The position numbers and the translations under genes are program-made. DNA of 64,000 nucleotides from Saccostrea cucullata (taxonomy: Eukaryota): positions 1 to 64,000 of the forward strand of contig NW_026925447.1 in the NCBI RefSeq assembly GCF_032062105.1, given 5' to 3'. Numbering within the stretch: position 1 is the stretch's first letter; each line of letters opens with the position of its first letter. The notes under the pieces were generated by a model. That model had not been told where the DNA came from. It searched no databases and saw nothing but the letters and a program-made list of their open reading frames with translations. Positions 36,884 through 37,433 of the stretch are shown piece by piece.

Positions 36884-37433
36884 ATGCCCCGAAAATTCAA
36901 AAGAGAGGAAGATCAAATAGTACAAAGAAATCGGCTGATAAGAGTTCACCTGAGGGGACAGGCAAGGCTATCAAAACGAACTCACTACAAAGTGAAAACC
37001 TTCCAGAGTCGGTCCCGTTAGATAATGAAAAGGGCAATGAAGCGAAATCACGGTCTGTGAATAAGAACAAAACTGACGATCATGACGCCGATGAACACAG
37101 CCTAAATGCACAACTTAAGTATGTCTGTGAACAAGCAGAATGTAATTATGACGAAATATCTACACTTAGGTCAGAAAACGCCTACTTGCGCCGAGAGGCG
37201 CCAGTGTCGACAGCAGAATCTTAGTTTACAGATTCCGAGAAAACGATGAAGTGGCTAAAAACTATCATGATGATGGCGAACATGGAGGGGGCCAACGCCT
37301 CCTTAAATTCATGCAGGACAACCAAATCTTCAACGCGGATATCGTTGTGACGAGATGGATGGGGGGACATATTGGACCTGAGCGTTTTACCATCATGGAG
37401 AACCTCCTGAACGATGTTGCAAATCTACTATAG
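36884..37433 (+). pseudogene. LINE ORF1 relic: basic N-terminus and coiled-coil start joined out of frame to an IMPACT/YigZ (UPF0029)-like domain
   Basis: 37200-37433 reads ASVDSRILVYRF..YHDDGEHGGGQRLLKFM..IFNADIVVTRWMGGHIGPERFTIM, the DDGE / VVxRWxGG / GPxRF signature. Confidence 0.8.

What the first reader, a model, noticed from the sequence alone, without database searches (positions are those of the whole stretch)
37200..37433. LINE ORF1 ends in an IMPACT/YigZ (UPF0029) 'ancient' domain
Seen: ~450 bp upstream of an AP-endonuclease ORF2, on the same strand, the frame reads ASVDSRILVYRF...DDGEHGGGQRLL...NADIVVTRWMGGHIGPERF. Known: this matches the HNxxAYR / DDGE..AG.RLL / VVVSRWYGG..LGPDRF motifs of the IMPACT/Yih1 ancient domain and bacterial YigZ. 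IMPACT antagonises GCN2 mainly through its RWD domain, which is not visible here. The ORF1 accessory domains usually described are RRM, CCHC, PHD and esterase. Inference: a Tx1/L1 lineage captured this domain, possibly for RNA binding or to modulate translation or the stress response. The conserved His of HN appears replaced (DSR).
Basis: partly seen in the sequence, partly recalled or inferred. Interest (0 to 1): 0.8.

Follow-up and report, generated by a model that had tools for sequence, protein, structure and literature searches.

The report
Oyster LINE ORF1 carries IMPACT domain
A large, recently active family of jumping genes (L1-like LINEs) in an oyster genome has fused the enigmatic 'ancient' domain of the translation regulator IMPACT to the end of its RNA-packaging protein. 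The copy in this window is a broken relic of that family.

Summary
Window 37200-37433 (+) translates as quoted and matches Pfam UPF0029 (E 6.5e-12, 45.8 bits against a cutoff of 27).

The window copy is dead:
- its ORF1 start codon reads ATT;
- a private 676-bp deletion removed the RRM, the CTD and the first third of UPF0029;
- a 1.55-kb nested insertion splits ORF2, which stops after about 240 aa.

Elsewhere in the same genome (almost surely Saccostrea cucullata) at least 149 loci carry the domain. They fall into at least 14 ORF1 subfamilies. Intact elements encode two proteins:
- ORF1p of 390-480 aa: disordered N-terminus, coiled coil, L1-type RRM and CTD, then a complete UPF0029 domain.
- ORF2p of about 1260 aa: APE, RT and zf-RVT, matching human L1 ORF2p at E 5e-87.

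Three copies are 99.8% identical and each has a poly(A) tail and its own target-site duplication. The domain is under strong purifying selection (dN/dS 0.05-0.09). The retrotransposon-borne (TE) domains form one clade, separated from cellular IMPACT with 100/100 support. There is no RWD domain.

The same ORF1 type also sits upstream of a different, non-L1 APE-RT ORF2 in four marine or unidentified contigs.

Databases call these ORF1s 'protein IMPACT homolog'. I found no paper linking UPF0029 to retrotransposons. What the domain does is inferred, not shown.

The parts
36706..36894 (+). 5' end and 5' UTR of the LINE copy. The 5' terminus motif GATCACGTGAC is shared with other subfamilies.
   Evidence: blastn to the intact copy L031: L031rc 572-1064 aligns to window 36706-37198 at 85.9%. 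The 5' ends of L032-L034 begin AAAAAGATCACGTGAC, and the window has the same motif near 36720.
36895..37198 (+). ORF1 remnant, codons 1 to about 101: low-complexity N-terminus and the start of the coiled coil. The start codon is ATT here, ATG in the intact copy.
   Evidence: Frame-2 translation ...IQKRGRSNSTKK...LNAQLKYVCEQAECNYDEISTLRSENAYLRRE, compared with L003/L031 ORF1 MQRRGRSNNTKK.... Alignment.
37198..37199 (+). Junction of a private 676-bp internal deletion. It removed the rest of the coiled coil, the RRM, the CTD, the linker and the first third of UPF0029, and it shifts the frame.
   Evidence: L031rc 1065-1740 has no counterpart in the window. Five other copies of the subfamily are colinear across that interval.
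37200..37433 (+). C-terminal two thirds of the UPF0029 / IMPACT 'ancient' domain, with the ORF1 stop codon at 37431-37433.
   Evidence: Translation. Pfam PF01205 at E 6.5e-12, profile 36-104/107.
37434..37888 (+). Inter-ORF spacer of 455 bp.
   Evidence: Intact copies have spacers of about 450-500 bp.
37889..38028 (+). ORF2 start: the N-terminus of the AP endonuclease.
   Evidence: ORF MSELKIISANCQGLHDFKKRKD.... It aligns to the start of L031 ORF2. Exo_endo_phos is only a weak hit on this fragment but is clear on intact copies.
38029..39582 (.). Nested insertion of 1.55 kb that interrupts ORF2. Its right-hand 843 bp (38740-39582) is a highly repeated element.
   Evidence: Gap in the blastn alignment to L031. 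At least 40 genomic copies at 88-96% identity, from 1988 first-look candidates.
39583..40159 (+). Continuation of the ORF2 AP endonuclease. The element ends here, at about ORF2 residue 241, with no RT.
   Evidence: L031rc 2570-3146 aligns to window 39583-40159 at 92%. ORF 39801-40001 carries the GDFN endonuclease motif.

Best explanation
Shown. The stretch is the decayed end of ORF1 of an L1-superfamily non-LTR retrotransposon. Intact relatives encode an ORF1p made of a disordered N-terminus, a long coiled coil, an L1-type RRM and CTD, and then a complete IMPACT-type UPF0029 ('ancient') domain as an extra C-terminal module. A 450-500-nt spacer separates it from an ORF2p with APE, RT and a zinc knuckle. 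The family is old, diverse and recently mobile in this oyster genome. The UPF0029 module is inherited with the element, is under strong purifying selection, and derives from a single capture of a eukaryotic IMPACT-like domain without its RWD domain.

Inferred. The coiled coil, RRM and CTD package the LINE RNA as a trimer, as in L1. The appended domain keeps the conserved loop face of IMPACT (His, YR, DDGE.GA, R..G, G..RF). Through that face it would dock the particle onto the domain's conserved cellular partner. The most likely partner is the translating ribosome or translation apparatus. That would favour loading of ORF1p onto its own RNA and/or translation of ORF2 after the long spacer. I put identity and architecture at about 0.9 and the docking mechanism at about 0.35.
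For: The domain:
- Pfam UPF0029 on the window piece and on intact ORF1s at E 2e-14 to 7e-26, profile 2-107.
- An ORF1 family profile against PDB hits Yih1 6bqi at E 4e-24, and human L1 ORF1p 2ldy, 2ykp and 2yko at 6e-6 to 1e-5 over the RRM and the start of the CTD.
- The AlphaFold2 model has mean pLDDT 83.8, with helix 61-130, RRM 134-207, CTD 215-255 and UPF0029 294-403.
- Foldseek hits Yih1, the human L1 ORF1p trimer (TM 0.57-0.60 on the target), TT1547 and YigZ.

The element:
- ORF2 has APE, RVT_1 and zf-RVT in nine subfamilies and matches human L1 ORF2p at E 4.9e-87.
- At least 149 genomic matches, in at least 14 ORF1 subfamilies with identity down to 21%.
- Three full-length copies are 99.77-99.85% identical over 5945 bp. 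Each has AATAAA, a poly(A) tail and a different 12-16-bp target-site duplication.

Selection and origin:
- dN/dS on UPF0029 is 0.05 (dS 0.49) and 0.09 (dS 0.80).
- 35 retrotransposon-borne domains separate from 17 cellular IMPACT domains with 100/100 support.
- The conserved IMPACT core positions are retained.
- ORF1 and ORF2 trees largely agree.

From the literature: Yih1/IMPACT associate with ribosomes, actin and Cdc28, and the invariant motifs cluster on one face of the domain (PMC4503747).
Against: - No experiment or expression data bear on function. Three oligo-dT RNA-seq runs gave only 10-46 reads, all in the last ~1.3 kb (3' end) of the element, and none on ORF1.
- The biochemical role of the UPF0029 domain is unknown in any organism.
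- In Yih1 the regions reported sufficient for ribosome and actin binding include the linker, not just the ancient domain.
- The net charge of the domain is about zero, which argues against a general RNA-binding role.
- The conserved His is replaced in two recently active subfamilies, and several IMPACT-specific surface positions are lost. The partner may therefore differ from IMPACT's.
- The host IMPACT gene of the oyster could not be fetched, so the donor lineage is unresolved.
Confidence: 0.75

Rival explanations
1. The domain acts like IMPACT itself. It would damp the GCN1-GCN2 branch of the integrated stress response, so that translation of the element continues in stressed cells.
For: The domain is much closer to eukaryotic IMPACT/Yih1 (E 4e-24) than to bacterial YigZ-type proteins (3.5e-3 and 0.09). 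IMPACT and Yih1 inhibit GCN2 when overexpressed (PMC4503747).
Against: Binding of Gcn1 by Yih1 depends on RWD helix 3 (D102/E106). No RWD domain is present in any ORF1, by Pfam or in the model. Several IMPACT-specific conserved positions are lost.
Confidence: 0.1
2. The conserved loop cluster (His, YR, DDGE.GA, R, G..RF) is a binding or catalytic site for a small ligand or nucleotide. In that case the domain brings an enzymatic or sensing activity to the particle, not a docking function.
For: The invariant residues are Asp, Glu, Arg, His and Gly in loops, and they are preserved from cellular IMPACT to the retrotransposon copies. Net charge near zero argues against a generic polyanion binder. 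A second multi-copy family in the same genome carries NADAR, an enzyme-type domain, in open frames of similar size (lead from s1-700954).
Against: No activity has been described for any UPF0029 protein in the papers I could search. The His is dispensable in recently active subfamilies.
Confidence: 0.2
3. These are cellular IMPACT-like paralogues that merely lie next to LINEs, or the domain is a neutral passenger acquired by transduction of a processed IMPACT fragment.
For: NCBI and UniProt name several of them 'protein IMPACT homolog' or 'IMPACT-like'.
Against: ORF1 and ORF2 sit together inside units bounded by target-site duplications and poly(A) tails, and those units are 99.8% identical at different sites. 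The arrangement holds in nine deep subfamilies and in four contigs from other samples. dN/dS is 0.05-0.09. Relatives that seem to lack the domain are truncated or frameshifted, and one is apparently a chimeric gene model.
Confidence: 0.03

Closest known systems
L1 ORF1p, the 'type II' ORF1 protein of Khazina and Weichenrieder (human L1ORF1p; PDB 2YKO, 2YKP, 2LDY)
   Same: An N-terminal disordered region, a long coiled coil, an RRM and a CTD. The family profile hits the PDB entries at E 6e-6 to 1e-5, and Foldseek gives TM 0.57-0.60 on the target. The protein is encoded upstream of an L1-type ORF2.
   Different: It has an extra linker of about 35 aa and a 110-aa UPF0029 domain after the CTD. Pfam Transposase_22 models do not detect it. 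The largest L1 ORF1 domain survey I could read lists Tnp_22, RRM, zf-CCHC, DUF4283 and HTH_1, and not this domain. That survey contains no mention of molluscs in its main text.
IMPACT / Yih1 (RWD plus 'ancient' UPF0029 domain; PDB 6BQI)
   Same: The C-terminal domain is homologous (E 4e-24). It keeps the core motifs His, YR, DDGE.GA, R.W.G and G..RF.
   Different: There is no RWD domain, so no Gcn1-binding module. The domain is fused to a retrotransposon RNA-binding protein and is multi-copy. It forms its own clade on a long branch (0.85) apart from cellular IMPACT. The DRKS.FQ motif and several other IMPACT-invariant positions are lost.
Bacterial YigZ / TT1547 (UPF0029 plus DUF1949; PDB 1VI7, 2CVE)
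   Same: The same fold: Foldseek rmsd 3.3 over about 120 columns.
   Different: Only a weak sequence relationship (E 3.5e-3 and 0.09). There is no DUF1949 domain, because the ORF ends with UPF0029.
Modular ORF1s of the Jockey/CR1 superfamily (PHD, RRM, CCHC and esterase modules; Metcalfe and Casane 2014, PMC4120745)
   Same: The principle is the same: ORF1 is built from exchangeable modules, and related ORF1s occur with unrelated ORF2 lineages. Here the coiled-coil-RRM-UPF0029 ORF1 occurs with L1-type ORF2s and with non-L1 ORF2s.
   Different: The module is UPF0029, which is not among those I saw listed.

Membership tests
UPF0029 / IMPACT 'ancient' domain (Pfam PF01205) | Match to the family profile above the gathering score | tested here: met
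   Window piece: 45.8 bits against a cutoff of 27. Intact ORF1s: 53.7-90.9 bits over profile 2-107.
UPF0029 / IMPACT 'ancient' domain (Pfam PF01205) | The fold of solved members (Yih1 6BQI, YigZ 1VI7, TT1547 2CVE) | tested here: met
   The AlphaFold2 model has pLDDT of 89-97 across the domain. Foldseek hits 6bqi at 1.6e-7, 2cve at 5.4e-5 and 1vi7 at 8.7e-5.
UPF0029 / IMPACT 'ancient' domain (Pfam PF01205) | Conserved motifs HN.YAYR, DDGE.GA and RW.GG..LGP.RF | tested here: met
   YR, D.E.G and G..R are invariant in 26 ORF1s. His is kept in 91% of 35 retrotransposon-borne domains, but is Ser or Asn in the window's subfamily and a neighbouring one.
IMPACT / Yih1 protein (GCN2 antagonist) | N-terminal RWD domain that binds GCN1 | tested here: not met
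   No RWD hit in any ORF1. The model shows coiled coil, RRM and CTD in front of the domain instead. Cellular IMPACTs found in the same searches do carry PF05773.
IMPACT / Yih1 protein (GCN2 antagonist) | Binding of GCN1, ribosomes or actin, and inhibition of GCN2 | not testable with these tools
   Needs biochemistry.
YigZ (bacterial UPF0029 protein) | C-terminal DUF1949 domain after UPF0029 | tested here: not met
   The ORF ends 1-8 residues after the UPF0029 domain.
L1-type (type II) ORF1p | Coiled coil followed by RRM and CTD | tested here: met
   Profile hits to 2ldy, 2ykp and 2yko. Model helix 61-130, RRM 134-207, CTD 215-255. Foldseek to the L1 ORF1p trimer over about 190 columns. The Pfam Transposase_22 models themselves do not hit.
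L1-type (type II) ORF1p | Trimerisation and RNA binding / chaperone activity | not testable with these tools
   Inferred from homology only.
L1 superfamily (L1/Tx1) non-LTR retrotransposon | ORF2 with an N-terminal APE, an RT and a C-terminal Cys-rich knuckle, colinear with L1 ORF2p | tested here: met
   Exo_endo_phos, RVT_1 and zf-RVT. Human L1 ORF2p at E 4.9e-87 over residues 2-894.
L1 superfamily (L1/Tx1) non-LTR retrotransposon | Poly(A) tail and variable target-site duplications, the signs of target-primed reverse transcription | tested here: met
   Three copies with AATAAA, an A-run of at least 23 nt and different 12-16-bp duplications.
L1 superfamily (L1/Tx1) non-LTR retrotransposon | Placement in the L1 or the Tx1 clade on an RT tree with reference elements | not tested
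   No reference Tx1 or L1 RT set was available. Published surveys place bivalve L1-like elements in Tx1 (PMC10294476). The three insertion sites seen here differ, so there is no sign of the site specificity typical of Tx1.

The most novel reading that the evidence does not exclude
The IMPACT 'ancient' domain is a portable module for docking onto the translation machinery, and LINEs co-opted it. Fused to the ORF1p trimer, it would tie the nascent particle to its own ribosome, or shield its translation. ORF1 modules carrying such conserved cellular domains (UPF0029 here, perhaps NADAR in a parallel family of the same genome) would be exchanged between unrelated LINE clades in marine invertebrates as a general way of manipulating the host. 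The retrotransposon copies would then be a natural, highly replicated mutational scan of a domain whose function has been open since IMPACT was described.
Probability: 0.2. Interest if true: 0.8.

Novelty: new variant of a known kind. Interest (0 to 1): 0.62.

Why it matters
It matters for three fields.

- Retrotransposon biology. It adds a new, strongly selected accessory domain to the short list known for LINE ORF1 proteins. The domain sits in elements that moved very recently. The same ORF1 type is paired with two unrelated ORF2 lineages, which is evidence for exchange of ORF1 modules between LINE clades.

- The IMPACT/YigZ field. The 'ancient' domain is conserved in all kingdoms, yet its molecular function is unknown. 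Here it works without the RWD domain, in a defined context (an RNA-packaging protein made on a bicistronic RNA). It comes in dozens of divergent natural variants that show which residues are indispensable. That makes hypotheses about its partner directly testable.

- Genome annotation. Many bivalve gene models named 'protein IMPACT homolog' or 'IMPACT-like' are retrotransposon ORF1s. They inflate apparent IMPACT gene counts.

Tried and rejected
- Pfam Transposase_22 models did not detect the ORF1 middle region. A family profile against PDB and a structure model were needed.
- Chance processed IMPACT fragment: rejected.
- A propagated deletion derivative encoding a short ORF1: rejected. The 676-bp deletion is private to the window copy.
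- Close relatives that lack the domain: all candidates turned out to be truncated, frameshifted or apparently chimeric gene models.
- Expression: three oligo-dT RNA-seq runs and one metatranscriptome gave only sparse reads near the 3' end and none on ORF1. This neither supports nor excludes ORF1 expression.
- Host IMPACT of the oyster: two RWD-like exons were found at G000:C1292:500802-503477 (-).
- Bacterial outgroup for the domain tree: not obtained. The attachment point of the retrotransposon clade among eukaryotic IMPACTs stays unresolved.
- A paper search for 'yigz' by word start matched personal names and was wasted. The whole-word search found no functional study.
- NADAR cross-check: the family is abundant (at least 151 matches). 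None of the listed places coincides with the ORF1-like frames that match only the coiled-coil-RRM part, so no link was shown.
- 3' ends of the non-L1 contigs: only short TATC or CTATTC repeats and no poly(A). This is weak evidence for a CR1/Jockey-like type.

Full report
**1. The observation**

Pfam places residues 12-76 of the 82-aa piece on UPF0029 (PF01205). The match covers profile positions 36-104 of 107, at E 6.5e-12 and 45.8 bits against a gathering score of 27. An ORF beginning with an AP-endonuclease N-terminus starts 455 bp downstream on the same strand.

**2. What the window copy is**

blastn against an intact relative (L031) maps the element to window 36706-40159. Its parts are as follows.

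- The 5' end and the first ~101 ORF1 codons lie at 36706-37198. The start codon reads ATT (36895-36897) where the intact copy has ATG.
- A 676-bp deletion follows. It removed the rest of the coiled coil, the RRM, the CTD, the linker and the first third of UPF0029, and it shifted the frame.
- The rest of UPF0029, the spacer and the first 140 bp of ORF2 lie at 37199-38028.
- A 1.55-kb foreign insertion lies at 38029-39582. Its right-hand 843 bp is a repeat with at least 40 genomic copies.
- The endonuclease resumes at 39583 and the element ends at 40159, at about ORF2 residue 241.

Five other copies of the same subfamily are colinear across the deleted interval, so the deletion is private to this copy. 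The window copy is therefore a dead relic.

**3. The family behind it**

The 82-aa piece finds at least 149 places in the window's own 1.17-Gb genome. Many lie in open frames of 390-480 aa, at identities from 88% down to about 30%.

One hit, named 'protein IMPACT homolog [Saccostrea cucullata]', lies on a contig of 695,370 bp. That is exactly the length of G000:C17990, so the genome is almost surely S. cucullata.

Twenty-four loci were cut out, and all of them hold an intact ORF1. Where an intact downstream reading frame was tested, it is an ORF2 of about 1260 aa with Exo_endo_phos, RVT_1 and zf-RVT. This holds in nine subfamilies whose ORF1s are as little as 21% identical. ORF2 of L031 aligns colinearly with human L1 ORF2p at E 4.9e-87.

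Three copies at different sites (L032, L033, L034) are 99.77-99.85% identical over 5945 bp. Each ends in AATAAA and a poly(A) run, and each is flanked by its own 12-16-bp target-site duplication. This is the signature of recent target-primed reverse transcription by an L1-like element. The three sites differ, so there is no sign of site specificity.

**4. Architecture of ORF1p**

Intact ORF1s carry the complete UPF0029 domain at their very end: profile 2-104/107 or better, at E 2e-14 to 7e-26.

A profile of 26 ORF1s was searched against PDB sequences.

| PDB hit | E-value | ORF1 profile positions |
|---|---|---|
| Yih1, the yeast IMPACT (6bqi) | 4e-24 | 293-407 |
| Human L1 ORF1p (2ldy, 2ykp, 2yko) | 6e-6 to 1e-5 | 110/143-252 |
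| Bacterial TT1547 (2cve) | 3.5e-3 | 299-393 |
| Bacterial YigZ (1vi7) | 0.09 | 301-392 |

An AlphaFold2 model built on that alignment has mean pLDDT 83.8. It shows these segments:

- a disordered segment, residues 1-61;
- one long helix, 61-130;
- an RRM, 134-207;
- a CTD, 215-255;
- a short helical linker;
- the UPF0029 fold, 294-403.

Foldseek matches Yih1, the human L1 ORF1p trimer (TM 0.57-0.60 on the target, over about 190 columns), TT1547 and YigZ. ORF1p is thus a complete L1-type ('type II') ORF1 protein with an IMPACT-type domain added after the CTD. No RWD domain is present.

**5. Is the domain functional in the element?**

Between lineages that have not saturated at synonymous sites, dN/dS on the UPF0029 part is very low.

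| Pair | dN/dS on UPF0029 | dS | dN/dS on RRM+CTD |
|---|---|---|---|
| L039-L040 | 0.05 | 0.49 | 0.16 |
| L032-L016 | 0.09 | 0.80 | 0.18 |

The domain is at least as constrained as the RRM and CTD.

Across 26 ORF1s the invariant residues are the YR of the first motif, D.E.G of DDGE.G, and G..R of G..RF.

I then compared 35 retrotransposon-borne domains with the positions that are at least 90% conserved in 17 cellular IMPACTs.

- Retained: His (91%), YR, DDGE, A, L, R, G, G..RF.
- Not retained: the IMPACT-specific DRKS.FQ motif and several other positions.

The His is Ser in the window's subfamily and Asn in the subfamily whose copies are 99.8% identical. It is therefore dispensable for mobility.

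Relatives that appeared to lack PF01205 are truncated, frameshifted or apparently chimeric gene models.

**6. Origin and spread**

A maximum-likelihood tree of the domain puts all 35 retrotransposon-borne sequences on one side of a branch with 100/100 support and length 0.85. All 17 cellular IMPACTs (nematodes, arthropods, vertebrates, an oomycete, an amoebozoan and others) lie on the other side. This fits a single capture.

Where that clade attaches among eukaryotic IMPACTs is unresolved. The oyster's own IMPACT (candidate exons at G000:C1292:500802-503477) could not be added.

Named relatives come from Saccostrea, Crassostrea/Magallana, Ostrea, Pinctada and Tegillarca. Two ESM Atlas clusters (57 and 242 members) are mostly Mollusca.

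A more distant set of ORF1s, about 355 aa long and 29-33% identical, has the same coiled-coil-RRM-CTD-UPF0029 layout and a canonical ATHN.YAYR motif. Five of them were looked up on assembled contigs.

- Three contigs (ENA ERZ6864376, JGI 3300039062 and Logan SRR11734638) carry, just downstream, a complete ORF2 of about 1000-1040 aa with APE and RT.
- A fourth, from Tara Oceans (PRJEB4352), carries a downstream ORF that the contig end cuts at 759 aa; its domains were not looked up.
- The fifth (ENA ERZ25084518) carries no downstream ORF2.

The three complete ORF2s have no zf-RVT hit. The one ORF2 tested against PDB has no hit to L1 ORF2p at E 1e-5 (its best hits are R2 RTs at 1e-11). It is only 22% identical to the oyster ORF2 over the RT.

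Its RT motifs look like those of the Jockey/CR1/I group. That judgement rests on my own knowledge and was not tested. Short TATC or CTATTC repeats near the 3' ends, and no poly(A), are weak support.

So the same ORF1 type is paired with two unrelated ORF2 lineages. That implies exchange of ORF1 modules between LINE clades, as described in principle for Jockey-superfamily ORF1s (PMC4120745).

Within the oyster, the ORF1 and ORF2 trees agree except for one subfamily, L045. Its ORF1 is far more divergent than its ORF2.

**7. How it most likely works**

Shown:
- the architecture;
- co-inheritance of the domain with the element;
- strong constraint on the domain;
- recent mobility of the family;
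- absence of an RWD domain.

Inferred: by homology to L1 ORF1p, the coiled coil trimerises and the RRM and CTD bind the element's RNA.

The added domain has a net charge near zero in both retrotransposon and cellular versions, so it is unlikely to be a generic RNA binder. It keeps the loop face that is invariant from YigZ to IMPACT. That face has been proposed to contact a conserved partner (PMC4503747).

Yih1 and IMPACT associate with ribosomes, G-actin and Cdc28/CDK1. Gcn1 binding depends on the RWD domain, which is absent here.

My best guess, at about 0.35, is that the domain docks the ORF1p trimer to the translating ribosome or an associated factor. That would help ORF1p load in cis onto its own RNA, and/or help translation of ORF2 after the 450-500-nt spacer.

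The rivals are these:
- a ligand-binding or catalytic role of the acidic loop cluster (0.2);
- an IMPACT-like damping of GCN2 signalling (0.1), made unlikely by the missing RWD;
- a cellular paralogue or neutral passenger (0.03), contradicted by the target-site-duplication-bounded units and by dN/dS.

**8. Comparison with what is known, and novelty**

The sequences are in public databases. They are named 'protein IMPACT homolog', 'IMPACT-like protein' (for example K1Q9C7 of Magallana gigas) or 'uncharacterized protein'.

- No paper in the searchable library holds both 'UPF0029' and 'retrotransposon'.
- Judging by title and abstract, none of the 40 listed papers (of 76 holding PF01205, UPF0029, Impact_N or IPR001498) concerns transposable elements.
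- The broad survey of L1 ORF1 domains lists Tnp_22, RRM, zf-CCHC, DUF4283 and HTH_1 (PMC5203782). Its main text contains no mention of molluscs.
- The bivalve LINE survey classifies by RT, and none of its 'IMPACT' word matches refers to the domain (PMC10294476).

The library is incomplete, and Repbase reports could not be searched, so prior notice cannot be excluded. I rate this as a new variant of a known kind: an L1-type ORF1p with a previously undescribed accessory domain.

**9. Limits**

- There is no expression or protein evidence. RNA-seq gave only sparse reads near the 3' end.
- The L1-versus-Tx1 placement was not tested.
- The donor lineage is unresolved.
- Copy numbers are lower bounds, because the genome search scores at most 150 candidates.
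- The organisms behind the metagenome contigs are unknown.
- A parallel first-stage note (s1-700954) reports a LINE ORF1 with a NADAR domain in this genome. I confirmed only that NADAR occurs at 151 or more places in open frames of 400-500 aa. I did not confirm that these are LINE ORF1s.

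Noticed in passing
window 38029-39582: A nested insertion splits ORF2 of the LINE copy. Its right-hand 843 bp (38740-39582) is a highly repeated element with at least 40 copies at 88-96% identity (1988 first-look candidates). It has no obvious ORF and is probably a non-autonomous repeat.
   Followed up: partly
window 17992-18522: A second fragment of a related LINE, 65.6% identical to the RT region of L031 ORF2.
   Followed up: no
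G000, e.g. C12786:367154-367585, C23030:32606-33031: The NADAR domain (PF08719) occurs at 151 or more places in open frames of about 400-500 aa. This multi-copy family parallels the UPF0029 one and is consistent with note s1-700954. I did not test whether these are LINE ORF1s.
   Followed up: partly
G000, e.g. C1275:8438-8980(-), C2032:51084-51695(-), C3848:41437-41991(-): Open frames of 354-512 aa match only the coiled-coil-RRM part of the ORF1 (residues ~20-211, 32-35% identity) and not UPF0029. They are related ORF1s with a different or no C-terminal module.
   Followed up: no
L045 (G000:C5439:700-7600): The ORF1 of this subfamily sits on a very long branch (21-26% identity to most others, ~65% only to L044/L047). 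Its ORF2 is close to those of L050 and L042, and the ORF1-ORF2 spacer is 1.4 kb, not ~0.5 kb. This may be a mosaic element, a nested insertion or an ORF1 swap.
   Followed up: partly
P0009, P0012, P0018, P0038, P0054, P0055: Public annotations call these retrotransposon ORF1s 'protein IMPACT homolog', 'IMPACT-like' or 'MCAP_0864-like'. P0055 looks like a chimeric gene model that joins fragments of two different LINE ORF1s. IMPACT gene counts in bivalve annotations are likely inflated.
   Followed up: partly
G000:C1292:500802-503477 (-): Two exon-sized matches to the RWD part of Xenopus IMPACT (50% and 40% identity). This is the probable host IMPACT gene of the oyster.
   Followed up: no
L055 5827-5849; L065 5375-5394: The non-L1 LINEs with a UPF0029 ORF1 carry short TATC or CTATTC repeats downstream of ORF2 and no poly(A). 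The element ends were not defined.
   Followed up: partly
window 33831-34094 (-) and 36158-36541 (-): Two short ORFs just upstream of the LINE copy look, by eye only, like exons of lectin-type or PAN/Apple-type extracellular domains. They were not scanned.
   Followed up: no
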